Assembly (NCBI RefSeq): GCF_006345805.1 | Contig: NW_021832498.1 | Span: 1 to 32,173 of the forward strand | Source: Octopus sinensis | Taxonomy: Eukaryota | Length of the DNA stretch: 32,173 nt | Reading direction: 5' to 3' | Shown here: piece by piece, positions 1 to 32,173 of the stretch | Numbering within the stretch: the stretch's first letter is position 1 | Layout: each line of letters starts with the position of its first letter | Position numbers and translations under genes: made by a program | Notes under the pieces: generated by a model | What the model was told of the DNA's origin: nothing | Database searches by the model: none | The model's input: the letters and a program-made list of their open reading frames with translations, nothing else

Positions 1-607
1 CCACCTTGGCTGCTACATTCCTGGCTGCTTTTTCACTTTTAAATTGCACTGTTATGGTTCCGTATTGTAATCCTTTTGTCATGTACACAATTTCCTCTCC
101 TGTCTGCTTGAGAGCCTCTTCAATTGCTTCCATGTTAATTACTTCCATCTTTTTCCCTCCATTCATAAAAACTTTATATTTAATGGTTCTACGATGGAAC
201 CAGTCTCCGCGCCCTACTGAGGGCAGCAGCTCAACCTCTCCGTTCTCGTTCTCTTTCACAAACTCCTGGAGGCCCGTCAACTTAGCCAGGTCTATCTCTC
301 TTTCCATTGACTTCTTCGTTACACCTGCGTAGGTGCCTTCCATCTTTTTCACCGCCAACTCCTCCTCAGATGTCGAAATTTCAGAGAAATTTCTCCCTTC
401 CATCTCCTCCGTTTGATGGAGGCGGCTCATAATCGCCTCAGACCGAAAAACGGCCTCCCGAACCGAAAAAGTTTAACGCGCTGAACGAGCGAAACGCGAA
501 ACCGCGTCAACGCCGTTCAGAGTTTCCACAACAACAACCACGCTTTTTTTTCTTTTTTACCGAATTTTCAGGAGCCGAAAAAAACACAACCGACGCCAAA
601 CGAAGTG
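1..607 (-). mobile_element. Unit A (5' part only) of the ORF1-only non-LTR-type element
   Basis: Aligns to the 5' portions of units B-D and is cut by the window edge. Confidence 0.85.
2..430 (-). CDS. N-terminal 143 codons of ORF1/Gag-like protein (MSRLHQTEEMEGRNFSEISTSEEELAVKKMEGTYAG...), open to the window edge
   Basis: Hand translation from the ATG at 430 is stop-free to position 2 and in frame with the ATG at 343. It is absent from the ORF track, probably because no stop lies in the window. Confidence 0.8.
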   Translation of the reverse strand, partial: MSRLHQTEEMEGRNFSEISTSEEELAVKKMEGTYAGVTKKSMEREIDLAKLTGLQEFVKENENGEVELLPSVGRGDWFHRRTIKYKVFMNGGKKMEVINMEAIEEALKQTGEEIVYMTKGLQYGTITVQFKSEKAARNVAAKV

Positions 608-619
608 CTAACGTTTCTG

Positions 620-2283
620 ATTTCTTTATTACCCACTAGGGGCTACATAGAGGGGACGTTACAAACATTGGGGACATGGAACATCACAATTACATATAAA
701 TGAGCAAAATGGAATATGAAAATGATATATGAGAGTGATACCGACGGCCCCATCCGCCAGCATCACTTATCTGTCCTTCTTCACCCAATTCCAATTAATA
801 TTCCCGTTTTTTCTATCACAACATTCGTTTTTCTTTTAGCCATCTCTATCCATTTCTCTTTCATTTCCACTGTCTTCCACCGCACACCCTCTTCCTCTAA
901 CCTTGTCGCCAATATACCCTTATCATCACTATCCACAGCCGTATAACTCCACTCTTCGTATTCGTACCACTTGGTTAACACCAGGTTTTTAACGTTTTGT
1001 ATGTCTTTCCCATGTACAACAAATAAAAAATGGGTCTTGGGACTTTCTTTGCTCTGTGTGTTTGTTTTGGATTTTCGTGTAGGCGGGGAGTGGGTGGAAT
1101 CACTGTTTGCCGGGGAGGGTTGGGACTCCAAGGGTATGGGTGGTGTCGGGGTGGGTTGGGGCTTCGCACAGTTTTTCTTTTTCCTTCTTTTTCTCTTTGT
1201 TCCCCCTTCTTTCCACTCTTGTTGCATCTCTTCTTCTGTCGTTTCCTTCTCTGTTTGTTTCTGTTTATTTTCTTCCTCTCCTGAGGCTTCCTCAACGCTT
1301 TCCTTTTCTTTTTCCTTTGGTGGGGGAGGGCAGTAGGCTCTTATGTGACCCCTTTGGCCACACTTGTAGCACCTGGGCGCCCTACCCTCCACCCACACTC
1401 TCATAATAATATTTCCAGTTTTTATGCTGTCCGTAATCCTCTCTATAACGTCCGCCTCCGTTTGAATGTTCATAACTAGTGTGGCACCTCTCACGCCTTC
1501 ATACTTCATAATGGCGTGGAGGATGTCCACTTTATCTTCATTTCCTTTTATTACCGCAGCCGTTATTACTTCGCCCTCTAGGTGTGGAGGTATTCCTTCC
1601 ACCCTAATTCTAGTTGTCCGCCTATTCAGATACGAGGGTAACAAGTAAAACTTTTCAGTACTCACCACCTTGGCTGCTACATTCCTGGCTGCTTTTTCAC
1701 TTTTAAATTGCACCGTTATGGTTCCGTATTGTAGTCCTTTTGTCATGTACACAATTTCCTCTCCTGTCTGCTTGAGAGCCTCTTCAATTGCTTCCATATT
1801 GATTACTTCCATCTTTCTCCCTCCATTCATAAAAACTTTATATTTAATGGTTCTACGATGGAACCAGTCTCCGCGCCCTACTGAGGGCAGCAGCTCAACC
1901 TCTCCGTTCTCGTTCTCCTTCACAAACTCCTGGAGGCCCGTCAACTTAGCCAGGTCTATCTCTCTTTCCATTGGCTTCTTCGTTACACCTGCGTAGGTGC
2001 CTTCCATCTTTTTCACACCAACTCAGATGCCAACCCTCCTCAGATGACGAAATTTCAGAGAAATTTCTCCCTTCCATCTCCTCCGTTTGATGGAGGCGGC
2101 TCATAATCGCCTCAGACCGAAAAACGGCCTCCCGAACCGAAAAAGTTCAACGCGCTGAACGAGCGAAACGCGAAACCGCGTCAACGCCGTTCAGAGTTTC
2201 CACAACAACAACCACGCTTTTTTTCTTTTTTACCGAATTTTCAGGAGCCGAAAAAAACACAACCGACGCCAAACGAAGTGGTG
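620..2283 (-). mobile_element. Unit B, full-length ORF1-only element (~1.66 kb)
   Basis: CpG-rich 5' UTR (~2105-2283), one long ORF, 161-nt 3' UTR ending ...GGGTAATAAAGAAAT. No ORF2. Confidence 0.85.
781..2007 (-). CDS. ORF1/Gag-like nucleic-acid-binding protein, 408 aa from the ATG at 2007: RRM-like core, CCHC zinc knuckle, K/E-rich and P/S/T-rich linker with KRKRRKKK, ~88-aa C-terminal domain
   Basis: Long ORF in the track (781-2016 from GTG). CYKCGQRGHIRAYC (1330-1371) is an exact CX2CX4HX4C preceded by RVWVEGRAPR, a context typical of L1/Tx1-clade ORF1 and ZCCHC3-like proteins. The ancestral N-terminus (ATG 2104) is frameshifted by a net 10-bp insertion. Confidence 0.85.
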   Translation of the reverse strand: MEGTYAGVTKKPMEREIDLAKLTGLQEFVKENENGEVELLPSVGRGDWFHRRTIKYKVFMNGGRKMEVINMEAIEEALKQTGEEIVYMTKGLQYGTITVQFKSEKAARNVAAKVVSTEKFYLLPSYLNRRTTRIRVEGIPPHLEGEVITAAVIKGNEDKVDILHAIMKYEGVRGATLVMNIQTEADVIERITDSIKTGNIIMRVWVEGRAPRCYKCGQRGHIRAYCPPPPKEKEKESVEEASGEEENKQKQTEKETTEEEMQQEWKEGGTKRKRRKKKNCAKPQPTPTPPIPLESQPSPANSDSTHSPPTRKSKTNTQSKESPKTHFLFVVHGKDIQNVKNLVLTKWYEYEEWSYTAVDSDDKGILATRLEEEGVRWKTVEMKEKWIEMAKRKTNVVIEKTGILIGIG

Positions 2284-2292
2284 ACGTTTCTG

Positions 2293-3952
2293 ATTTCTTT
2301 ATTACCCACTAGGGGCTACATAGAGGGGACGTTACAAACATTGGGGACATGGAACATCACAATTACATATAAATGAGCAAAATGGAATATGAAAATGATA
2401 TATGAGAGTGATACCGACGGCCCCATCCGCCAGCATCACTTATCTGTCCTTCTTCACCCAATTCCAATTAATATTCCCGTTTTTTCTATCACAACATTCG
2501 TTTTACTTTTAGCCATCTCTATCCATTTCTCTTTCATTTCCACTGTCTTCCACCGCACACCCTCTTCCTCTAACCTTGTCTCCAATATACCCTTATCATC
2601 ACTATCCACAGCCGTATAACTCCACTCTTCGTATTCGTACCACTTGGTCAACACCAGGTTTTTAACGTTTTTAACGTTTTGTATGTCTTTCTCATGTACA
2701 ACAAATAAAAAATGGGTCTTGGGACTTTCTTTGCTCTGTGTGTTTGTTTTGAATTTTCGTGTAGGCGGGGAGTGGGTGGAATCACTGTTTGCCGGGGAGG
2801 GTCGGGACTCCAAGGGTATGGGTGGTGTCGGGGTGGGTTGGGGCTTCGCACAGTTTTTCTTTTTCTTTTTTCTTTTTCTCTTTGTTCCCCCCTCCTTCCA
2901 CTCTTGTTGCATCTCTTCCTCTGTCGTTTCCTTCTCTGTCTGTTTATTTTCTTCCTCTCCTGAGGCTTCCTCAACGCTTTCCTTTTCTTTTTCCTTTGGT
3001 GGGGGAGGGCAGTAGGCTCTTATGTGACCCCTTTGGCCACACTTGTAGCACCTGGGCGCCCTACCCTCCACCCACACTCTCATAATAATGTTTCCAGTTT
3101 TTATGCTGTCCGTAATCCTCTCTATAACGTCCGCCTCCGTTTGAATGTTCATAACTAGTGTGGCACCTCTCACGCCTTCATACTTCATAATGGCGTGGAG
3201 GATGTCCACTTTATCTTCATTCCTTTTATTACCGCAGCCGTTATTACTTCGCCCTCTAGGTGTGGAGGTATTCCTTCCACCCTAATTCTAGTTGTCCGCC
3301 TATTCAGATACGAGGGTAACAAGTAAAACTTTTCAGTACTCACCACCTTGGCTGCTACATTCCTGGCTGCTTTTTCACTTTTAAATTGCACCGTTATGGT
3401 TCCGTATTGTAGTCCTTTTGTCATGTACACAATTTCCTCTCCTGTCTGCTTGAGAGCCTCTTCAATTGCTTCCATATTGATTACTTCCATCTTTCTCCCT
3501 CCATTCATAAAAACTTTATATTTAATGGTTCTACGATGGAACCAGTCTCCGCGCGCCCTACTGAGGGCAGCAGCTCAACCTCTCCGTTCTCGTTCTCCTT
3601 CACAAACTCCTGGAGGCCCGTCAACTTAGCCAGGTCTATCTCTCTTTCCATTGCTTCTTCGTTACACCTGCGTAGGTGCCTTCCATCTTTTTCACCGCCA
3701 ACTCCTCCTCAGATGACGAAATTTCAGAGAAATTTCTCCCTCCATCTCCTCCGTTTGATGGAGGCGGCTCATAATCGCCCTCAGACCGAAAAACGGCCTC
3801 CCGAACCGAAAAAGTTCAACGCGCTGAACGAGCGAAACGCGAAACCGCGTCAACGCCGTTCAGAGTTTCCACAACAACAACCACGCTTTTTTTCTTTTTT
3901 ACCGAATTTTCAGGAGCCGAAAAAAACACAACCGACGCCAAACGAAGTGGTG
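2293..3952 (-). mobile_element. Unit C, full-length ORF1-only element
   Basis: Aligns end to end with unit B. Confidence 0.85.
2454..3772 (-). pseudogene. Frameshifted ORF1 copy in unit C
   Basis: Versus units A/B: -1 near 3740, -1 near 3653, +2 near 3551, -1 near 3220, plus in-frame indels (9-bp KNV duplication near 2660). Some single-base indels could be assembly errors. Confidence 0.8.
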
Positions 3953-3961
3953 ACGTTTCTG

Positions 3962-5643
3962 ATTTCTTTATTTACCCACTAGGGGCCACATAGAGGGGAC
4001 GTTACAAACATTGGGGACATGGAACATCACAATTACATATATATGAGCAAAATGGAATATGAAAATGATATATGAGAGTGATACCGACGGCCCCATCCGC
4101 CAGCATCACTTATCTGTCCTTCTTCACCCATTTTCAATTAGCATTCCATTCTTTCCTATCACAACATTCGTTTTTCTTTCAGCCATCTCTATCCATTCCT
4201 CTTTCATTTCCACTGACTTCCACCGCACACCCTCTTCCTCTAACCTTGTCGCCAATATACCCGTATCATCACTATCCACAGCCGTATAACTCCAATCTTC
4301 GTGTTCGTACCACTTGGTCAACACCTGCTTTTTAACGTTTTGTATGTCTTTCCCATGTATAACACATAAAAAATGGGTCTGGGGACTTTCTTTGCTTTGT
4401 GTGTTTGTTTTGGATTTTCTTGTAGGAGGGGAGTGGGTGGAATCACTGTTTGCCGGGGAGGGTTGGGACTCCAAGGGTATGGGTGGTGTCGGGGTGGGTT
4501 GGGGCTTCGCACAGTTTTTCTTTTTCCTTCTTTTTCTCTTTGTTCCCCCTTCTTTCCACTCTTGTTGCATCTCTTCTTCTGTCGTTTCCTTCTCTGTTTG
4601 TTTCTGTTTATTTCTCTTCCTCTCTGGGGCTTCCTCAACGCTTTCCTTCTTTTTTTCTTTTTCCTTTGGTGGGGGAGGGCAGTAGGCTCTTATGTGACCC
4701 CTTTGGCCACACTTGTAGCACCTGGGCGCCCTACCCTCCACCCACACTTCATAATAATATTTCCAGTTTTTATGCTGTCCGTAATCCTCTCTATAACATC
4801 CGCCTCCGTTTGAATGTTCATAACTAGTGTGGCACCTCTCACGCCTTCATACTTCATAATGGCGTGGAGGATGTCCACTTTATCTTCGTTTCCTTTTATA
4901 ACCGCAGCCGTTATTAATTCGCCCTCTAGGTGTGGAGGTATTCCTTCCACCCTAATTCTAGTTGTCCGCCTATTCAGATACGAGGGTAACAAGTAAAACT
5001 TTTCAGTACTCACCACCTTGGCTGCTACATTCCTGGCTGCTTTTTCACTTTTAAATTGCACCGTTATGGTTCCGTATTGTAATCCTTTTGTCATGTACAC
5101 AATTTCCTCTCCTGTCTGCTTGAGAGCCTCTTCAATTGCTTCCATGTTAATTACTTCCATCTTTCTCCCTCCATTCATAAAAACTTTATATTTAATGGTT
5201 CTACGATGGAACCAGTCTTCCGCGCGCTCTCCTGACTGAGGCAGCAGCTCCACCTCTCTCCGTTTTCGTCCTCCTTCACAACTCCTGGAGGCCCGTCAAC
5301 TTAGCCAGGTCTGTCTATCTCTCTTTCCATTGACTTCTTCGTTACACCTGCGTAGGTGCCTTCCATCTTTTTCACCGCCAACTCCTCCTCAGATGACGAT
5401 ACTTCCGTCGAAATTTCAGAGAAATTTCTCCCTTCCATCTCCTCCGTTTGATGGAGGCGGCTCATAATCGCCTCAGACCGAAAAACGGCCTCCCGAACCG
5501 AAAAAGTTTAACGCGCTGAACGAGCGAAACGCGAAACCGCGTCAACGCCGTTCAGAGTTTCCACAACAACAACCACGCTTTTTTTCTTTTTTACCGAATT
5601 TTCAGGAGCCGAAAAAAACACAACCGACGTCAACGAAGTGGTG
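3962..5643 (-). mobile_element. Unit D, full-length ORF1-only element (5'-most, outer end of the array)
   Basis: Aligns end to end with unit B; homology ends at about 5643-5652. Confidence 0.85.
4124..5465 (-). pseudogene. Frameshifted ORF1 copy in unit D
   Basis: -1 indel near 4748 splits ORFs 4124-4747 and 4690-5253; several indels at 5218-5320; in-frame 12-bp insertion near 5400. Confidence 0.8.
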
Positions 5644-5666
5644 CCGTTTCTGCCAGCTCGCTGTCT
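5644..5666 (-). other. Remnant of a tRNA-derived SINE head (A-box region), presumed insertion target at the outer array end
   Basis: Minus strand reads AGACAGCGAGCTGGCAGAAACGG. TGGCAGAA matches the head of the degenerate SINE at 19761, and AGAAACG matches the junction spacers and 32111-32125. Confidence 0.6.
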
Positions 5667-6207
5667 TCGTGAAGCTATAAACAGTAGCAGGTAAATATCC
5701 GGTTGAAAAACGCTTTGAGATAAAAAGTTGGAGGCTCCCGTAGACAAGAGAGTCGTTCTAAAGTTGGACCAAAGCATTTCCGTCCATTTTCAAAGCTTTA
5801 TTCTTACCGGCGAGAATTGTTTGTTGTTGATGTCATAGGAATTTATAAACTTTTGAGAAAACGTGAAATAATTATTTGTTTTTGAACAATGGATCTCGAA
5901 GCACGTAAAGCAATAAATACGTGTTTCGAGTCCCACTGTTCCAGAAAGAATTGTTTTATGATCTCTCGAGAGTTTATACATTTTTATGACGTCAACGTGA
6001 GAATTATTTTCGCTTTCACTTTTAGCGAATAGGAAAACTAGTGCTCACGAATCTTTATAGAGGCTCCGAAACTGGAACGCTCATGGGATAGAGCAAGGTG
6101 TCCTTAATTTGGGGACTTGGGCCGAATGCTTGCAACAGAGCGGATCTTGCTAAAGGTACCCAAGGACCAGGGGATGTTAAACAGAGCGACGGATTCAATC
6201 TAGTAAA

Positions 6208-6300
6208 TTCTTCTTCTTCTTCTTCTTTTTCTTCTTCTTCTTCTTCTTCTTCTTCTTCTTCTTCTTCTTCTTCTTCTTCTTCTTCTTCTTCTTCTTCTTC
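6208..6300. repeat. (TTC)n microsatellite, ~31 units
   Basis: Direct reading. Confidence 0.97.
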
Positions 6301-6315
6301 TTTATATGTGTGTGT

Positions 6316-7747: not shown

Positions 7748-8404
7748 TGCATATGTGAATGCGTGTGCACACCCCTATATATATTCTTTTCTAAGTGACC
7801 GCAACCGAGATGCATTTCATCTTACAGTTCCAGGAATTTATATCTTCCTTAGCTTCGGTAAATTCTTGACTCTGTGTCTCTCCTAATAATATCTTTGGAA
7901 TTGTCATAATACATGCTAAACAGCAGATTCATTCCCCACTACATGTCTCCAATTAAGTTTTTAAAAATTTAGATTTTGGGGTTGTACTAGGTGCTTTTTT
8001 TGACAGGAAATACCAATCACACTATTGGTTACAGTTTTTATTAATTAGAGATGCAATATTAATTGATTAATAATACCTTTTGGTTAACAACATTAAATAT
8101 GTTAACGCTATATACCTATATGCACTGATATATAAATCCAATTAGGTATACACGTATTTTTTCTTTGTAGATACGTGTATCTCTAGTTAGCTAAATGAAT
8201 CTAAAGATATGAATGCAAAGATCTATGAGATATACGTCATCATATATACTCACGTGTGAGTATACATGTGATCTATATGAGAAATTAAGTCGCCATCTTA
8301 AATCCTTTATATACGATAGTACTGAAATCTCAATGAACACAAACGTTCATTCTGACATGCGACTAAGTTAGACAACTACATTGCATTCCTTTCACAAAAT
8401 TTGT

Positions 8405-8467
<63 letters not shown>

Positions 8468-8485
8468 CACACACACACATATATA

Positions 8486-8536
<51 letters not shown>

Positions 8537-8859
8537 TACATTTATACTACAGAAAATGTATATTTCCTTTTATGAATGCTTATGTATACATATATATATA
8601 TATATCATATATATATATATATATCGGTAATTGTTGGACTTTGAATACATGGTTGGTCATATGCCGTTTAAACCACTTTCAACGTTTAGGCTACCTGATG
8701 TCAACCATTTTCGGTTTCCCCTCATTCATTATAAACTCTTACTTTCTTTCTCTCCCTCCCCCTCCCTCCCTCCACTCTCTCTCTCTCTCTCTCTGTATAT
8801 ATATATATATATATATAACAATAATAATTCTCTGAGCGAGATATAAACAGTAACTGTTC

Positions 8860-8996
8860 TATAACATAAGGGGGATCAGCCATCTGAATGTGGCTAGGGA
8901 CAGGGCGGGGTGTGGTGGGTGGGCTAAATGCATCAGTAACACACCCACCACCCCGCCCTGTCCCTAGCCACATTCAGATGGCTGATCCCCTTATGT

Positions 8997-9000
<4 letters not shown>
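8860..9000. repeat. 141-bp near-perfect inverted repeat (MITE-like or hairpin)
   Basis: Arms 8860-8921 and 8942-9000 are reverse complements apart from a 1-bp and a 2-bp indel; 20-nt loop; TA-rich ends. Confidence 0.9.
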
Positions 9001-9029
<29 letters not shown>

Positions 9030-9033
9030 TACA

Positions 9034-9497
9034 CATTAATCCCTCGACTATCGCGGGTGTTACGTTCCAAACCCCACTGCGACGGTGAAAGTCTGCGAAC
9101 TAGATACAGAACTGTGAATTCTTTTAAAATCATTTTTACAATTTGTATATATTTACTTTATCGTAGATGCAAAACAACACAACACACTCATCTCCCGAGT
9201 TTCGTCTACCATACAGTATGTCGGTACACTACGTATTTTCTTTTAATATGTTTTGATTAATGTTATACAGTGCAGTAACTTACTGTATTTTATTAATTAA
9301 TTTACTATTTTTATGCGTGAAAATGTTTATTTAACCACAGAGATAATTAAAATCTAAAATAATATGAATACATATCGGCCGCAGAAATCCGCGATATACT
9401 GAGGAGTCTGCGATATAAATTTACATATATTAGTTAGAAAAATCCACGATACTCTGAGGGCGTGATAGGTGAACCGCGATATAACTAGTAATTACTG
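9034..9497. mobile_element. Degenerate pogo/Tigger-like non-autonomous DNA transposon (MITE)
   Basis: Left end CATTAATCCCTCGACTATCGCGG and right end CCGCGATATAACTAGTAATTACTG are imperfect inverted repeats resembling CAGT..-type pogo/Tigger TIRs; repeated subterminal CCGCGATA motifs. Confidence 0.55.
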
Positions 9498-9504
9498 CAT
9501 GTAT

Positions 9505-9925
<421 letters not shown>

Positions 9926-10438
9926 CCATACGTGTGTGTTTGTGTGTGTGTGTGTATTTAGAGGCATATATATATATATATATATACAACTTATAAATAA
10001 GGGCAAACGAAAAAAATTCTAATGCCAAATATGCCGAAATTGGACATATTGTCCATAACCAACATGTTTATAATTTTAACCTTGAAAGGTATTTTTTAAT
10101 ATGCTGGCCATTGATAAAATATTTTCTTTCGAAAAAAAAATTTTATCCTACATTAAATATATATATATATATCCACACACATATATATAATATTATATAA
10201 TATAATATAATATAATATATATATATATAATATATAATAATATATATGTATGTATGATATATAATGTATTAATATGTATTGTGCGTGATTGTATGCGTGA
10301 TGTAAGTGTGTGTGGGGATATATTTTAGATGATAGAGAAATTAGTAGAGTGGACTGGTAAACCTTGAAGGTTGTGCTGTAGCATGGCCAGTATCCTGAAA
10401 CGAAGCAGAATATATATGCGAGTGTACGTGAGGAGTAC

Positions 10439-10504
<66 letters not shown>

Positions 10505-10981
10505 GTATGTATGTATGTGTGCCTAAGTAAAACATTTAACGTGTTGCTAATAAGTGTTGGTAGATAGAAAATTCACCACAAACGAATAAGAGGCGTATGT
10601 TGAAAGACAACGTGTACAGTGTATACAGAAACGTTTGGAAAGGCAAAAACTTTCTAAGACTTTTTACACTTCTGTCAACTCTGTCAGACAATCATTAACG
10701 GTAACCATATTCTTTGATCATTAATCATCGTTCCAATCAAGTGTCTGTTATTACCAATTAATGGAAGCGTCATTAACGTGGTGTTCTTCAGTGTTACGCT
10801 GGAGACGTTCTTTTAACTGATGCTAACGATTCCATCTAATAGTTTACTACTGGTCGTAAACGGCACGCCGACCGGATGCGAACACATTCTTAGCCATATA
10901 TATATATACAACACACGCACACAAAAGTACTTCGTACATACATATGTGTACACATACATGCAATATATATACATACATACA

Positions 10982-11013
<32 letters not shown>

Positions 11014-11089
11014 AATATATATAATGTACACACACAAAAAATAACAGACACAAAATCAGACGCATAAATACAGAATCTACACTCAAACA

Positions 11090-11277
11090 CTCATGATATA
11101 TATACATATATACATCTGCATACATAAATTATATATATATATATATATATGTTATATTATATATATGTATATATATATATATGTATATTTATATATATAT
11201 ATATAGATTTATATATATGTATATATATATAGATATATATATATATAATATTATATATATGTATATATATATGTGTG

Positions 11278-11310
<33 letters not shown>

Positions 11311-11416
11311 TATATATATTATGGAATATATATATATTATATATATATTATATATATACATCCTCTATACTATATATAATATATATATATATATTATATA
11401 TATGTATATATATATA

Positions 11417-11448
<32 letters not shown>

Positions 11449-11600
11449 CATACAGACACGGAGAGTCAGATATAGGTAGGTAAAATACAGATGTATACAC
11501 TAAAATACACACACACACTCGCACACATATATGTATATGTATATATAAACACATTATATACACTAGCATACCCGAGTGCACAAAGCCATTAATGTATATG

Positions 11601-11632
<32 letters not shown>

Positions 11633-11689
11633 CAACAATTTTATATATATATATATATATATATACATTAATGGGTTTATCTATCGATC

Positions 11690-11779
<90 letters not shown>

Positions 11780-12010
11780 CTATCTATCTATCTATCTATA
11801 TATATATATATATATCTATATAACTATTATCACCCCTCCCACCGCTCACTACACATAAAGTAAACTTATGCATGACACATTTGTGTATTTATCTCTCCCT
11901 AACTTTACTCATACTAAACACAAACAAAACACACACACACACACACATACAGACACACACACGCACTCACCACACATGCGTTCATGCACACACAAGACAC
12001 ACATAACAAC

Positions 12011-12058
<48 letters not shown>

Positions 12059-12061
12059 GTA

Positions 12062-12092
<31 letters not shown>

Positions 12093-12222
12093 CATATATG
12101 TGTGTGTGTGTGTGTGTGACAATAGTTTCGCGTAATTGAATGTACACACCAGAACATACCTGTGTGCACTTATACACCCACGCACTCACAACTCATGTCC
12201 ATCTGTGTATCCATATCTATCA

Positions 12223-12275
<53 letters not shown>

Positions 12276-12284
12276 CATATACAC

Positions 12285-12327
<43 letters not shown>

Positions 12328-12440
12328 AAACATTTGATTAAAATATAAGTATGTATAAATTTATGCATATATTTAAACACATGTAGTCCCATACTTTAGC
12401 ACACATGTGTATATGTACATATGGATACATGCATGTGTTG

Positions 12441-12471
<31 letters not shown>

Positions 12472-12675
12472 GTGTGTGTTGTATGTGAGTGGGTGTGTGT
12501 GTGTGTGTGGTGTGTGTGTGTGTGTGTTGTGTGTAGATATATACGTATACACACTCACAACACACACTCACACAAACAAATGTACATATCATATGCTTAT
12601 ATATGTAAAAGTATATATATATATATAATATATATGTACATATGTAAATAAATTTATATATATATATGTATATAT

Positions 12676-12716
<41 letters not shown>

Positions 12717-12909
12717 TATATTTATACTTACAAATTTATATATATTATATGTGTGTGTGTTTACATATTTACATATATACACTGAAATATATATATAACT
12801 GTACATATATATCATATATATATAAGATATATATATTATAAATATAAATATATGAATATAGATCAATTTGTGTATAGATATATATACAAAGTCATATATA
12901 CTACATATA

Positions 12910-12947
<38 letters not shown>

Positions 12948-13024
12948 ATAAATATATGAATATAGATATAAATTTATGTATACAAATATATATACAAATA
13001 CATATATATACAGATACATGTATA

Positions 13025-13060
<36 letters not shown>

Positions 13061-13521
13061 TTTGATTTTGATTTTTCCAGTTTCAGCTCATGAGCTGTGG
13101 CACTTATATATATATATATAAATTTATGCACACACAAGCATATATACACACAGACACATTTATATGCCAGAGTCATATATCGATAGGAACGTATTCATGC
13201 AGATACATAAATAATGAACACGTGCGCAAACATAATTGTTTAGTTTTTCGTAATGTATGCATAATGAATATATATTATACATTACTCGTTTAATTATTCA
13301 ATTAATCTATCATTCAATTCATTTCTCCATGTTTCTGTATGTATGTATGTATGTATGTATGTATGTATCTATCTATGTATGTATGTATGTATGTATGAAT
13401 GTATGTATGTATGTATGTATCTATCTATCTATCTATCAGTCTTTATTCTATACACACGCAATTATACATATATTTATATACAAGTACGTATTATATATAT
13501 GTATACATGTATATGTCTCTG

Positions 13522-13598
<77 letters not shown>

Positions 13599-13675
13599 GT
13601 ATCTATGTATCTATGTATCTATCTATGTATCTATGTATCTATCTATCTATGTATCTATGTATCTATGTATCTATG

Positions 13676-13751
<76 letters not shown>

Positions 13752-13799
13752 AATGCATATATATACACTCACAAACACGCACACACTCACACACACAAA

Positions 13800-13850
<51 letters not shown>

Positions 13851-13880
13851 CTCACATATATGTATGCGTATATGTAAGTA
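11090..13880. repeat. Compound microsatellite block: (AT)n, (ATCT)n, (ATGT)n, (AC)n
   Basis: Direct reading; it accounts for the many Y/I/H/T low-complexity ORFs. Confidence 0.95.
13058..13101 (-). mobile_element. Short 3'-end retroposon fragment with (AAAATC)n tail
   Basis: GTTTCAGCTCATGAGCTGTGGC is shared with 24401-24456. Confidence 0.55.
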
Positions 13881-14378
13881 TGTATGCATTTGCAAACTGG
13901 AGCTTATACGAAGTGTATTCGCCTATGCTTACCAATACATAATAATAACTGCACATCGCATTGTGCTCTATTTGGCAGACATCGCGTACCTCCGCGTATA
14001 TACTCTGCCACGTATATACATTCACACACATAATGGATTTCATTATGGGTAATTAACTTATCCCAATAATTAGATTTCGGCAAATTACCTTATTGTCACT
14101 GTAATAGCCATCGCTAATATCGTTAGTGTTATTTTCTTTACTTTTATGATCAGTATGCTTTTAATTTTCAATGTTCTCATTATTTTTCTCTCATAATGAT
14201 GTTACATTTTTGCTCTTTCTTCTAGGTTGTACTTTATAATAGAATATTGTACTCTATTATACTATATTGTACACTATTGACCTCTATTGTACTCTATTAT
14301 ACTCCATTGTACGGCATTTTATTACGTTATATTTTGTTTTGTTCTGATTTATAAAATAACCTCTCTCTACATGTATCT

Positions 14379-14429
<51 letters not shown>

Positions 14430-14488
14430 ATATATATACATACTACCACACACATATATACGTGTGTGTGTGTGTGTAAATATATATA

Positions 14489-23513: not shown

Positions 23514-23584
23514 CTACAGATATTATAGTCAGCACTGATTTCTTTAGAAAATTTGTAGCGATGACCTTAACACGTGAATTATGT

Positions 23585-23729
23585 GCACTGCTAATACAGT
23601 ACTGCACTTCTAACACAGTACTGCACTACTAACACAGTACTGCACTGCTAACACAGAACTCCACTGCTAACGCAGTACTGCACAGCTAACACAGTACTGC
23701 ACTGCTAACACAGTACTGCACTGCTAACA
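23585..23729. repeat. 19-bp minisatellite (CTAACACAGTACTGCACTG) x ~7.5
   Basis: Units start at 23591, 23610, 23629, 23648, 23667, 23686, 23705 and 23724. Confidence 0.95.
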
Positions 23730-31690: not shown

Positions 31691-31756
31691 CGAAAAATAA
31701 AAAAAATATAGACGCAACGATATGACTGAGAGAAGTAAAAGAACACACATAAACAT

Positions 31757-32173
31757 ATTTTCTACTCTGGGCACAAGCCCTGAAATTTTTGGCAAGGGAG
31801 CCAATCGATTAGATCGACTCCAGTACACAACTGGTACTTAGTTATCGACCCCAAAGGATGAAAGGCAAAATCGACCTCGACGGAATTTGAAATCAGAACA
31901 CAAAGAGAGAGGAAATACCTATTTCTGTACTACCCACAAGGGGCTAAACACAGAGAGGACAAACAAGGACAGACAAAGGGATTAAGTCGATTATATCAAC
32001 CCCAGTGCGTAACTGTTACTTATTTAATCGACCCCGAAAGGATGAAAGGCAAAGTCGACCTCAGCGGTATTTGAACTCAGAACGTAGCTTGTTGTGTGTG
32101 GTGTGTGTGTGTGCTAACGTTTCTTATTTCTTTATTGCCCACATGGGGCTAAACATAGAGGGGACAACAAGGA
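31757..32173 (-). mobile_element. Nested head-to-tail chain of tRNA-derived SINEs with a Meta/MESC-like central domain
   Basis: Two copies of GTTCTGA(G/T)TTCAAAT..GAGGTCGA(C/T)TTTGCCTTTCATCCTTT(C)GGGGTCGAT, and two copies of the tail ..AGCCCC..GTGGG..A(A/G)TA(A/C)AGAAAT (ending at 32126 and 31921), each directly followed by SINE-head sequence. Confidence 0.85.

What the first reader, a model, noticed from the sequence alone, without database searches (positions are those of the whole stretch)
1..5652. RT-less, ORF1-only retroelement forming a head-to-tail array
Seen: at least four ~1.67-kb units, each with a CpG-rich 5' UTR, one intronless ~410-440-aa ORF with a CCHC knuckle, and a 161-nt 3' UTR with AATAAA but no poly(A). 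There is no room for ORF2, no LTRs and no TIRs. Known: HAL1 ('half-L1') elements encode only ORF1 and borrow RT in trans; Drosophila HeT-A is a Gag-only element in head-to-tail arrays; Tx1-clade LINEs often have CCHC ORF1s and are sequence-specific. Inference: this is a non-autonomous ORF1-only element of L1/Tx1 type in a mollusc-like genome. I do not recognise it as a described family.
Basis: partly seen in the sequence, partly recalled or inferred. Interest (0 to 1): 0.85.

Follow-up and report, generated by a model that had tools for sequence, protein, structure and literature searches.

The report
ORF1-only LINE array in octopus
The repeat is a real head-to-tail array of a small octopus retrotransposon that keeps only the RNA-binding first gene of an L1/Tx1-type LINE and borrows the copying enzyme from full-length relatives, an invertebrate counterpart of mammalian "half-L1" elements rather than a new kind of element.

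Summary
The array is real. It holds three complete units and one unit cut by the window edge, each about 1.66 kb, on the minus strand of window 1-5652. One 15-nt spacer lies between neighbouring units. Only one unit has an open ORF (408 codons from ATG); two are frameshifted.

The ORF is a LINE ORF1. Its relatives sit directly upstream of an endonuclease+RT ORF2 (human L1 ORF2p, E 2e-71) in Octopus vulgaris, O. sinensis, O. bimaculoides and Argonauta. Its model shows two RRM-like folds plus a CCHC knuckle, the Type I ORF1p layout.

The last 45-70 nt of the unit match the 3' ends of those LINEs and of an octopus SINE subfamily.

Two solo ORF1-only copies in O. sinensis have open ORFs, no ORF2 and 16-19-nt target-site duplications. 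Pairwise dN/dS among the three open ORFs is about 0.2.

The spacer equals 15 nt of a SINE head, and the array's upstream flank is the SINE's 5' end. The element therefore inserted into a SINE. The duplicated target was then re-used, or the array grew by unequal exchange.

This is a new member of the HAL1-like kind.

The parts
5653..5685 (-). Upstream flank of the array: the 5'-terminal ~33 nt of an octopus SINE, ending ...GCGAGCTGG
   Evidence: Aligns with the 5' end of SINE copies in O. sinensis locus L001; sequence read.
5638..5652 (-). Spacer S0 (CAGAAACGGCACCAC): target-site copy, the next 15 nt of the SINE head
3962..5637 (-). Unit U1, 1676 nt, full length at both ends; ORF broken (8 frameshifting and 2 in-frame indels relative to U3, no substitution stops)
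3947..3961 (-). Spacer S1 (CAGAAACGTCACCAC)
2293..3946 (-). Unit U2, 1654 nt, full length; ORF broken (3 frameshifting and 3 in-frame indels relative to U3, no substitution stops)
2278..2292 (-). Spacer S2 (CAGAAACGTCACCAC)
620..2277 (-). Unit U3, 1658 nt, the only unit with an open ORF
2008..2277 (-). U3 5' UTR, 270 nt, CpG observed/expected 1.68; the first 180 nt are 82-85% identical to the O. sinensis L009 copy, against 67% in the RRM-CCHC coding part. Presumed internal promoter (inferred).
781..2007 (-). U3 ORF, 408 codons from ATG plus stop (the mechanical ORF starts at GTG 2016, 411 codons): ORF1-type protein
   Evidence: homologues.
1666..1854 (-). First RRM-like fold (about aa 55-117 of the 411-aa ORF)
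   Evidence: AlphaFold2 model with pLDDT 81; Foldseek best hits are tandem-RRM proteins.
1387..1629 (-). Second RRM-like fold (about aa 130-210)
   Evidence: the best-conserved block of the family.
1327..1374 (-). CCHC zinc knuckle (aa 215-230, CYKCGQRGHIRAYC)
   Evidence: Pfam 19.3 bits; family profile against HIV-1 nucleocapsid knuckles, E 3e-7; cysteines invariant.
784..1308 (-). Family-specific C-terminal half (aa 237-411): K/E-rich linker, conserved Pro-rich motif and a ~90-aa C-terminal block. It has no counterpart in the LINE ORF1 or ORF2.
620..780 (-). U3 3' UTR, 161 nt. The last ~65 nt (620-687) form the tail shared with autonomous LINEs and a SINE subfamily. It contains AATAAA, ends ...GAAAT and has no poly(A).
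605..619 (-). Spacer S3 (CAGAAACGTTAGCAC), identical to the 15-mer of the SINE head at O. sinensis L001 9439-9453
1..604 (-). Unit U4, 5' part only, cut by the window start; the upstream ATGs are in frame here
32111..32173 (-). Separate copy of the same kind of 3' tail (32126-32173; its body lies beyond the window end), followed directly by the same SINE-head 15-mer (AAGAAACGTTAGCAC, 32111-32125)

Best explanation
The array consists of copies of a 1.66-kb non-autonomous non-LTR retrotransposon of octopods. The element encodes only an ORF1-type RNA-binding protein: two RRM-like folds, one CCHC knuckle and a family-specific C-terminal half.

Shown here:
- The ORF is homologous to the ORF1 of autonomous L1-superfamily LINEs of Octopus and Argonauta.
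- The element has no ORF2.
- Its last 45-70 nt are shared with those LINEs and with a SINE subfamily.
- Independent solo copies with open ORFs are flanked by 16-19-nt target-site duplications.
- The ORF evolved under purifying selection.
- In the window, one 15-nt copy of a SINE-head sequence separates the units, and the array's upstream flank is the 5' end of that SINE.

Inferred:
- The conserved CpG-rich 5' UTR acts as an internal promoter.
- The transcript ends just after its AATAAA.
- The ORF2 protein of a partner LINE recognises the shared tail and copies the RNA in trans by target-primed reverse transcription. This gives full-length, poly(A)-less, TSD-flanked insertions.
- The element's own ORF1 protein coats its RNA in cis.
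- The array began when the element landed in a SINE head and the duplicated 15-nt target was used again (double insertion). Unequal exchange may then have added units.

The two frameshifted units suggest that much of this array is decaying, if those indels are real.
For: ORF1 homology and partner LINEs:
- O. vulgaris locus L002 has at least 3 head-to-tail 5.28-kb units. Each holds an ORF1 31% identical to window aa 17-234 and a 1132-aa ORF2 with Exo_endo_phos, RVT_1 and zf-RVT.
- That ORF2 matches human LINE-1 ORF2p at E 2e-71 over residues 3-868.
- The same ORF1+ORF2 layout occurs in O. sinensis L009, Argonauta hians L011 and O. bimaculoides L014.

Fold:
- The AlphaFold2 model has pLDDT 81 and pTM 0.63.
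- Foldseek top hits are IMP3 RRM12 (E 8e-6), NONO, raver1 and hnRNP A1 UP1.
- The knuckle is supported.

Shared tail.

Solo copies:
- L001 9458-11055 has an open 384-385-codon ORF and no ORF2. It is flanked by CAGAAA(C/T)GTTAGCACGCCG on both sides, inside a SINE.
- L009 2497-4184 is 67% identical to the whole unit. It has an open 463-codon ORF and a perfect 16-nt TSD.

Selection: pairwise dN/dS is 0.20-0.24, with dS saturated.

Cis elements: the 5' UTR and the tail are better conserved than the RRM-CCHC coding part.

Spacer and flank equal the SINE head.

Target re-use elsewhere:
- An exact 17-nt repeat brackets a LINE that directly abuts a different LINE in L014.
- GAATACTCGTCAT recurs at three junctions of unlike LINEs in L009.
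- TSD-like junctions occur in L002.

Literature:
- A TSD inside the junction is the signature of double insertion, as in the Drosophila R1 array (10.1101/158386).
- L1-Tx1 families are reported as recently active in O. vulgaris (PMC13282606).
- Type I ORF1p is defined as RRM plus CCHC (PMC5203782).
Against: - No autonomous LINE with a closely similar ORF1, 5' UTR or full 3' UTR was found. The nearest LINE ORF1 is 31-37% identical, against 46-58% among ORF1-only copies.
- The partner is therefore inferred only from a 45-70-nt tail that also contains a generic AATAAA.
- No conserved RNA structure was detected in the tail.
- The solo copies come from another genome and belong to other subfamilies (66-67% nt identity). 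Dispersed copies of this subfamily in the source genome were not seen.
- The downstream end of the array lies outside the window.
- Two of three complete units are frameshifted.
- All four units have identical full-length 5' ends and the same spacer. Unequal exchange alone explains this as well as repeated insertion does.
- The re-used target sequences at the different loci show no evident common motif, so the reason for re-use is unknown.
Confidence: 0.8

Rival explanations
1. The array is a TE-derived macrosatellite. One ORF1-only element inserted once into a SINE, and the array grew purely by unequal exchange or replication slippage between its flanking 15-nt duplications and then between units. 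The array says nothing about continuing mobility.
For: The units are 97-99% identical. All are full length with identical ends and the same spacer. Three of the four spacers share the same two departures from the SINE sequence, as copies of one another would. Two units carry frameshifts. Expansion of TE dimers by unequal exchange is documented (10.1101/158386).
Against: Related arrays in L009 and L014 join unlike elements across the same spacer. Unequal exchange cannot do that, so serial insertion at one site does occur in this LINE group. This rival concerns how the array grew, not what the unit is, and it is compatible with the main explanation.
Confidence: 0.3
2. The units are copies of a domesticated host gene. 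On this view an ORF1-derived RNA-binding protein, comparable to vertebrate ZCCHC3 or L1TD1, was amplified as a tandem gene cluster for a cellular or defence role.
For: dN/dS is about 0.2. The upstream region is CpG-rich and conserved. There is a compact promoter-ORF-AATAAA unit and a family-specific C-terminal half absent from the LINE ORF1s. Annotators have called relatives as genes.
Against: Copies at non-orthologous loci are flanked by their own 16-19-nt target duplications. The 3' end is the LINE/SINE tail. One copy sits inside a mixed LINE array. Two of three complete units in the window are frameshifted. Purifying selection is also expected for an ORF1 that the element needs.
Confidence: 0.07
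3. The unit is the remnant of an ordinary full-length LINE that recently lost ORF2 by internal deletion. On this view it is a deleted copy of an already catalogued L1-Tx1 family that then duplicated locally.
For: Internal deletion derivatives of LINEs are common; HAL1 arose this way several times (PMC5753468). L1-Tx1 families are catalogued in O. vulgaris. Repbase and Dfam could not be searched here.
Against: Three copies share the same ORF1-only architecture, the same 5' end and the same C-terminal half. Synonymous divergence among them is saturated and nt identity is only 66-67%. The loss of ORF2 is therefore old and the lineage has diversified since. No similarity of the C-terminal half or the proximal 3' UTR to LINE ORF1, ORF2 or UTRs was found.
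Confidence: 0.08
4. The array, or its unit number and frameshifts, is an assembly artefact of a long-read assembly.
For: There is an unusual excess of 1-nt indels over substitutions between units: 9 of 15 indel events in U1 and 5 of 10 in U2 are 1 nt.
Against: The units differ by 12-48 substitutions and by longer indels, and the spacers differ. They are therefore not copies of one read. Analogous arrays occur in three independent assemblies.
Confidence: 0.05

Closest known systems
HAL1 ('half-L1') of mammals
   Same: Both are non-autonomous LINE derivatives that encode only ORF1p and rely on the ORF2 protein of an autonomous L1-superfamily element (PMC5753468).
   Different: HAL1 has the mammalian Type II ORF1p (coiled coil, RRM, CTD) and a poly(A)-type 3' end (own knowledge). 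The octopus element has a Type I layout (two RRM-like folds plus CCHC) and a C-terminal half not found in the LINE ORF1s. It has a specific poly(A)-less tail shared with a SINE. It forms an old, diversified lineage, and it occurs in arrays.
L1-Tx1 LINEs of Octopus (13 recently active families reported in O. vulgaris, PMC13282606) and the Tx1 clade in general
   Same: The partner LINEs retrieved here have an RRM/CCHC ORF1 and an APE+RT+zinc-finger ORF2 similar to L1 ORF2p. Tx1-clade elements are known for sequence-specific insertion into repeats (own knowledge; PMC4640811 appeared but was not read). The tail here abuts the same SINE-head position at three independent loci.
   Different: The window element has no ORF2. 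Clade membership of the partners was not tested by phylogeny. The target is preferred but not exclusive: the L009 copy used a different target.
Drosophila melanogaster R1 tandem array and TE tandems formed by double insertion (McGurk & Barbash)
   Same: In both, head-to-tail non-LTR elements are separated by one copy of the duplicated target. The proposed origin is double insertion at one site followed by unequal exchange (10.1101/158386).
   Different: R1 is autonomous and targets rDNA with a 33-nt spacer. Here the element is ORF1-only and the target is a SINE head with a 15-nt spacer.
HeT-A / TART / TAHRE telomeric arrays of Drosophila
   Same: A Gag/ORF1-only element (HeT-A) lies head-to-tail with autonomous relatives. 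O. sinensis L009 shows a comparable mix of an ORF1-only element and full LINEs.
   Different: The Drosophila elements belong to the Jockey clade, sit at chromosome ends, join poly(A) to variably truncated 5' ends and lack TSDs (own knowledge). Here the retrieved related loci (L001, L002, L009) lie inside chromosome-scale records, the units are full length, and target copies lie in the junctions.
SINE-LINE tail sharing (stringent-type LINEs)
   Same: The 3' tail is shared between an autonomous LINE and its non-autonomous passengers. An octopus SINE subfamily carries the same tail as the ORF1-only element; the concept is described in PMC5786205 (listed).
   Different: This passenger is protein-coding and 1.66 kb long. 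It has a CpG-rich 5' UTR instead of a tRNA-type head.
Domesticated ORF1 genes (L1TD1; ZCCHC3)
   Same: All are stand-alone ORF1-derived proteins. ZCCHC3 has an RRM-like plus CCHC layout (own knowledge). L1TD1 is covered by PMC4161310 (listed).
   Different: Those are single-copy syntenic host genes. The octopus units carry TSDs and a LINE tail and lie in TE arrays. No named ZCCHC3 or L1TD1 hit came back from any search here.

Membership tests
ORF1-only non-autonomous LINE derivative (HAL1-like) | Encodes a protein homologous to the ORF1 of autonomous LINEs | tested here: met
   The protein is 31-37% identical to ORF1s lying directly upstream of APE+RT ORF2s in L002, L009, L011 and L014. A deep HMMER search gave 253 relatives at E<=1e-3.
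ORF1-only non-autonomous LINE derivative (HAL1-like) | No reverse transcriptase or endonuclease gene in the element | tested here: met
   The unit is 1.66 kb, with 270 nt of 5' UTR, 1.23 kb of ORF and 161 nt of 3' UTR. TBLASTN with a LINE ORF2 finds nothing in the window.
ORF1-only non-autonomous LINE derivative (HAL1-like) | Dispersed copies bounded by target-site duplications (evidence of retrotransposition) | tested here: met
   L001 has an 18/19-nt TSD and L009 a 16/16-nt TSD, in O. sinensis. This was not testable in the source genome itself.
ORF1-only non-autonomous LINE derivative (HAL1-like) | 3' end shared with an autonomous partner that can supply RT | tested here: met
   A 45-70-nt tail is shared with LINEs of O. 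vulgaris, O. sinensis and Argonauta hians. Whether any of these is the actual partner is inferred.
ORF1-only non-autonomous LINE derivative (HAL1-like) | Derivation from a full-length LINE by loss of ORF2 (collinearity on both sides of a deletion) | tested here: inconclusive
   Only the RRM-CCHC part and the tail are shared with the LINEs retrieved. The C-terminal half and the proximal UTRs have no match. Closer LINEs may exist but could not be searched for.
L1 superfamily, Tx1 clade | ORF2 with APE endonuclease and L1-type RT (for the partner LINE) | tested here: met
   Pfam finds Exo_endo_phos, RVT_1 and zf-RVT. Human LINE-1 ORF2p matches at E 2e-71 over EN+RT, against 1e-24 for R2.
L1 superfamily, Tx1 clade | RT groups with Tx1 reference elements in a phylogeny | not testable with these tools
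   No reference LINE library (Repbase/Dfam) was available. The literature lists L1-Tx1 families in O. vulgaris.
L1 superfamily, Tx1 clade | Sequence-specific insertion into a repeated target | tested here: inconclusive
   Three independent tails abut the same SINE-head position: the window array, window 32111-32125 and L001. The L009 copy and the LINE arrays use other targets with no evident common motif.
Type I LINE ORF1p (RRM + CCHC; Khazina & Weichenrieder classification as cited in PMC5203782) | At least one RRM fold | tested here: met
   The model has pLDDT 81 and shows two beta-alpha-beta-beta-alpha-beta-like modules. Foldseek best hits are tandem-RRM proteins at E 8e-6 to 1e-4. No Pfam RRM hit was found by sequence.
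Type I LINE ORF1p (RRM + CCHC; Khazina & Weichenrieder classification as cited in PMC5203782) | CCHC zinc knuckle after the RRM | tested here: met
   The CX2CX4HX4C motif lies at aa 215-230. Pfam gives 19.3 bits for the window protein (cut-off 20.8), and relatives score above the cut-off. The family profile matches HIV-1 NC at E 3e-7.
HeT-A-type telomeric Gag-only element | Located at chromosome ends, with junctions of poly(A) to variably truncated 5' ends and no TSD | tested here: not met
   The junctions carry a 15-nt target copy and the units are full length with no poly(A). TRF reported no telomere-type repeat in the window. The related loci lie deep inside chromosome-scale records.
Tandemly duplicated host gene | All copies lie in one (syntenic) locus, with no TSDs and no TE termini | tested here: not met
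   TSD-flanked copies at different chromosomes of O. sinensis. LINE/SINE tail.
TE tandem formed by double insertion (R1-array type) | Exactly one copy of the target-site duplication in every junction, identical to the flank | tested here: met
   Four 15-nt spacers, one at the upstream flank and three internal, match the SINE head. The downstream flank is outside the window.

The most novel reading that the evidence does not exclude
Octopods may harbour an old, independently evolving 'ORF1-only' LINE lineage. It has its own promoter region and its own C-terminal protein domain, and it is kept under purifying selection. Together with several L1/Tx1 subfamilies and a SINE, it repeatedly re-uses the same insertion sites, namely SINE heads and the 5' borders of resident elements. 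This would build interstitial mixed head-to-tail arrays, a non-telomeric analogue of the HeT-A/TART system. The cause of site re-use is unknown and may be a targeting principle not yet described for L1-type elements.
Probability: 0.25. Interest if true: 0.7.

Novelty: new member of a known kind. Interest (0 to 1): 0.5.

Why it matters
ORF1-only LINE derivatives are documented mainly as mammalian HAL1. This case would show that the same strategy evolved in a mollusc from a Type I (RRM+CCHC) ORF1. The lineage is long-lived, under purifying selection and shares a stringent 3' tail with a SINE. That pattern argues that keeping one's own ORF1 protein pays off for a passenger element.

The arrays also give clean, sequence-level examples of how retrotransposons turn into tandem repeats, because target copies sit in every junction. 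In addition, they flag LINE ORF1s that octopus genome annotations currently list as host genes.

In practice, units of this kind should be masked as repeats in cephalopod annotation.

Tried and rejected
- Tandem Repeats Finder did not report the array, because its longest period is 500. The repeat finder and BLASTN were used instead.
- Rfam at gathering thresholds found nothing in the window or L001. ARAGORN found no tRNA. The SINE head is therefore called a SINE only by its recurrence and box-B-like motif.
- RNAalifold on ten tails gave 2 invariant pairs and no covariation. A conserved stem-loop in the tail is not supported.
- The word-indexed protein search returned one hit each time. Family names and a deep alignment for structure prediction therefore could not be obtained. 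The model rests on 4 sequences.
- Sequence and profile searches of the PDB hit only CCHC knuckles. The IGF2BP3 RRM scored E 1.2, not significant.
- The idea that the C-terminal half is a remnant of the LINE ORF1 C-terminus or of ORF2 was rejected, with no hit better than E 0.7.
- The idea that the window array and L001 are orthologous was rejected. Their flanks are unrelated apart from the SINE, and the elements are only 66% identical with saturated dS.
- The idea that the 15-mer belongs to the element's own 5' end was rejected. The L009 copy lacks it and has a different TSD.
- Look-ups of P0006, P0008 and P0012 found no record.
- The sigma-70 promoter scan was not used, because it is irrelevant to a eukaryote.

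Full report
**1. Observation**

The repeat finder shows five direct-repeat families tiling window 1-5650, with start-to-start spacings of 1664-1692 nt. Tandem Repeats Finder missed the array because its period limit is 500. BLASTN of one unit against the window returns three full copies and a fourth cut by the window start, at 95-97% identity including gaps.

All coding sense is on the minus strand. Anchoring on the end motif gives these units:

| Unit | Window coordinates | Length |
|---|---|---|
| U1 | 3962-5637 | 1676 nt |
| U2 | 2293-3946 | 1654 nt |
| U3 | 620-2277 | 1658 nt |
| U4 | 1-604 | partial |

Counting substitutions only, the units are 97.1-99.3% identical.

- The 5' UTR is 270 nt, with CpG observed/expected 1.68, against 0.63 in the CDS and 0.89 in the rest of the window.
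- The 3' UTR is 161 nt, contains AATAAA, ends ...GAAAT and has no A-run.
- A CX2CX4HX4C knuckle is present (Pfam 19.3 bits, cut-off 20.8).
- Nothing in the window resembles an RT or endonuclease.

Two points differ from the finding. First, only U3 has an open ORF: 411 codons from GTG and 408 from ATG. Relative to U3, U1 carries 8 frameshifting indels and U2 carries 3, and neither has substitution stops. Many of these are 1-nt indels and could be assembly errors. The longer 428-437-codon form is visible only as the in-frame start of U4 and U1. Second, the units are not directly abutted. A 15-nt spacer lies between each pair and before the first unit.

**2. What the ORF is**

The word-indexed search found a single relative, Octopus sinensis LOC118767527, at 46% identity. 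The exhaustive HMMER search with aa 1-235 found 253 relatives at E<=1e-3. Every named one comes from an octopod: O. vulgaris, O. sinensis, O. bimaculoides or Argonauta hians.

Genomic context settles the identity.
- In O. vulgaris (L002), a relative 31% identical to window aa 17-234 is the first ORF of a 5.28-kb unit.
- The second ORF of that unit, 1132 aa, has Exo_endo_phos, RVT_1 and zf-RVT domains.
- It matches human LINE-1 ORF2p at E 2e-71 across endonuclease and RT, far better than R2 proteins at 1e-24.
- The same ORF1+ORF2 arrangement is seen in O. sinensis L009, Argonauta hians L011 and O. bimaculoides L014.

The window ORF is therefore an ORF1 of an L1-superfamily LINE group.

An AlphaFold2 model of aa 43-235 was built from only 4 sequences and reaches pLDDT 81 and pTM 0.63. 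It shows two beta/alpha modules followed by the knuckle. Foldseek's best PDB matches are tandem-RRM proteins: IMP3 RRM12 at E 8e-6, then NONO, raver1 and hnRNP A1 UP1. RRM plus CCHC is the Type I ORF1p layout, which the literature associates with plant L1 and Tx1-type elements (PMC5203782). A recent O. vulgaris repeat annotation lists 13 recently active L1-Tx1 families (PMC13282606). Clade membership itself was not testable here.

**3. Is it a mobile ORF1-only element or a gene cluster?**

Four lines of evidence bear on this.

(a) Shared tail. The last 45-70 nt of the unit align with three other classes of 3' end:
- the 3' ends of the autonomous LINEs in L002 and L009, and of the Argonauta LINE in L011;
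- the two O. sinensis ORF1-only copies;
- a subfamily of an octopus SINE present at window 31921-32000 and at 32126-32173.

No covarying RNA structure was found in the tail. The conservation is at sequence level.

(b) Solo copies with target-site duplications.
- L001 9458-11055 (1598 nt) has an open 384-385-codon ORF, no ORF2 and the same tail. It sits inside a SINE, flanked on both sides by a 19-mer (CAGAAACGTTAGCACGCCG and CAGAAATGTTAGCACGCCG).
- L009 2497-4184 is 67% identical to the whole window unit. It has an open 463-codon ORF and is flanked by a perfect 16-nt duplication (GGATGTGATATAATGA).
- Both copies start within a few nucleotides of the window units' 5' end.

(c) Selection. Pairwise dN/dS among the three open ORFs is 0.20-0.24, with saturated dS. 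The ORF1-only architecture is therefore old and the protein has been kept functional.

(d) Distinct lineage.
- The C-terminal half (aa 236-411) is conserved between the window and the L009 copy and partly in L001.
- It has no detectable match in LINE ORF1 or ORF2.
- ORF1-only copies are 46-58% identical to each other, against 31-37% to LINE ORF1s.
- The unit is thus not a fresh deletion of any LINE retrieved.
- Its 5' UTR (82-85% identity over the first 180 nt) and its tail (84%) are better conserved than the RRM-CCHC coding part (67%). This fits cis-acting roles: a promoter at the 5' end and RT recognition at the 3' end (inferred).

**4. How the array formed**

The spacers are CAGAAACGGCACCAC, CAGAAACGTCACCAC (twice) and CAGAAACGTTAGCAC. 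The last is identical to the 15-mer of the SINE head at L001 9439-9453. The sequence upstream of the first spacer (window 5653-5685) aligns with the SINE's 5'-terminal ~33 nt.

The element therefore landed in a SINE head, and each junction holds one copy of the duplicated target. This is the signature of double insertion at one site, with possible later expansion by unequal exchange. It was described for the Drosophila R1 array (33-nt rDNA spacer) and for P-element tandems (10.1101/158386).

For this homogeneous array, the two routes cannot be separated. Serial insertion is nevertheless real in this LINE group:
- In O. bimaculoides L014, an exact 17-nt repeat brackets one LINE whose downstream copy abuts a different LINE subfamily.
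- In O. sinensis L009, the ORF1-only element and at least four unlike LINEs lie head-to-tail, and the same GAATACTCGTCAT spacer sits at three junctions.
- L002 junctions carry a copy of the upstream flank.

The same SINE-head position is used by the window array, by L001 (a different subfamily in a different locus) and by the unrelated tail at window 32111-32173. This points to a preferred target. Other loci use unrelated sequences, and I could not find a common motif. Why sites are re-used remains unexplained.

**5. Mechanism: best account**

Shown:
- ORF1 homology.
- Absence of ORF2.
- The shared tail.
- TSD-flanked solo copies.
- Purifying selection.
- Target copies in the junctions.

Inferred:
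- Transcription starts from the conserved CpG-rich 5' UTR.
- The 3' end forms just after AATAAA.
- The element's own ORF1 protein coats the RNA.
- A partner LINE's ORF2 protein recognises the tail.
- Target-primed reverse transcription produces full-length, poly(A)-less copies.

**6. Comparison and novelty**

The element works like mammalian HAL1 (PMC5753468). It differs in ORF1 type, in its tail-dependent 3' end, in its own C-terminal domain and in its age. It resembles HeT-A only superficially.

I file it as a new member of a known kind, namely ORF1-only non-autonomous LINEs. Whether the family is already in Repbase or Dfam could not be checked. The octopus literature I could search reports L1-Tx1 families but mentions no ORF1-only elements or LINE arrays.

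**7. Limits**

- There was no access to the source genome, so there is no copy-number census, no view of the array's downstream end and no identified partner at high identity.
- The structure model rests on four sequences.
- The frameshifts may be assembly errors.

Noticed in passing
L009 1-20850 (O. sinensis CM016867.1), L002 4437-20000 (O. vulgaris OX597840.1), L014 9783-20675 (O. bimaculoides CM046605.1): Full-length L1-type LINEs of different subfamilies lie head-to-tail, with target-like spacers in the junctions. Three of the six chromosomal LINE ORF1 loci sampled were such arrays. In L009 the ORF2s of the three complete LINEs are each interrupted (at least 2, 1 and 3 times). The first L002 unit has both ORFs open.
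   Followed up: partly
window 32111-32173 (-): A second, independent LINE/SINE-type tail at the far end of the window is followed directly by the same SINE-head 15-mer as in the array. After that, an (AC)n run replaces part of the SINE.
   Followed up: partly
window 31750-32110 (-); L009 569-720; L013 14350-14440: The SINE subfamily carrying the LINE tail is repeatedly followed, at the same junction (...GAAAT then A/TGGTATTTC...), by the middle of another SINE copy with a different tail. This looks like a composite (dimeric) SINE family that spreads as a unit.
   Followed up: partly
window 1033-1302 (-), unit positions 976-1245: The K/E-rich and Pro-rich linker of the ORF is 82% identical at nucleotide level between the window and L009 copies, more than the RRM-CCHC part (67%). 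It contains a conserved Pro/Thr-rich motif (KPQPTPTPP...THSPPTRK). This could be a cis-acting RNA element, a protein interaction motif or a sign of recombination between subfamilies.
   Followed up: no
window 1-5652: There is an excess of 1-nt indels over substitutions between units, only partly in homopolymer runs. This may reflect long-read assembly error, so the 'broken' ORFs of U1 and U2 need read-level confirmation.
   Followed up: partly
L003-L008, L010 (Logan contigs from runs SRR11869384-94): Contigs of about 1.0-1.7 kb from several sequencing runs carry a 294-aa (or 133-aa) relative of the ORF, with UTR-like flanks and no ORF2. They may be transcripts of another ORF1-only family in an unidentified species.
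   Followed up: no
P0004, P0034, P0035 (database names): LINE ORF1 relatives are annotated as host proteins: 'EPM2A-interacting 1-like' in O. vulgaris, and 'ABC transporter F family member 4-like' and 'C2H2-type domain-containing protein' in O. bimaculoides. These are likely annotation artefacts.
   Followed up: no
window 6208-6302; 8400-14450; 23584-23729: A (TTC)n run of about 32 copies lies 550 nt upstream of the array. A 6-kb block at 20-30% GC is made almost entirely of AT-, TATC- and TCTA-type microsatellites. A 19-nt tandem repeat occurs in 7.7 copies.
   Followed up: no
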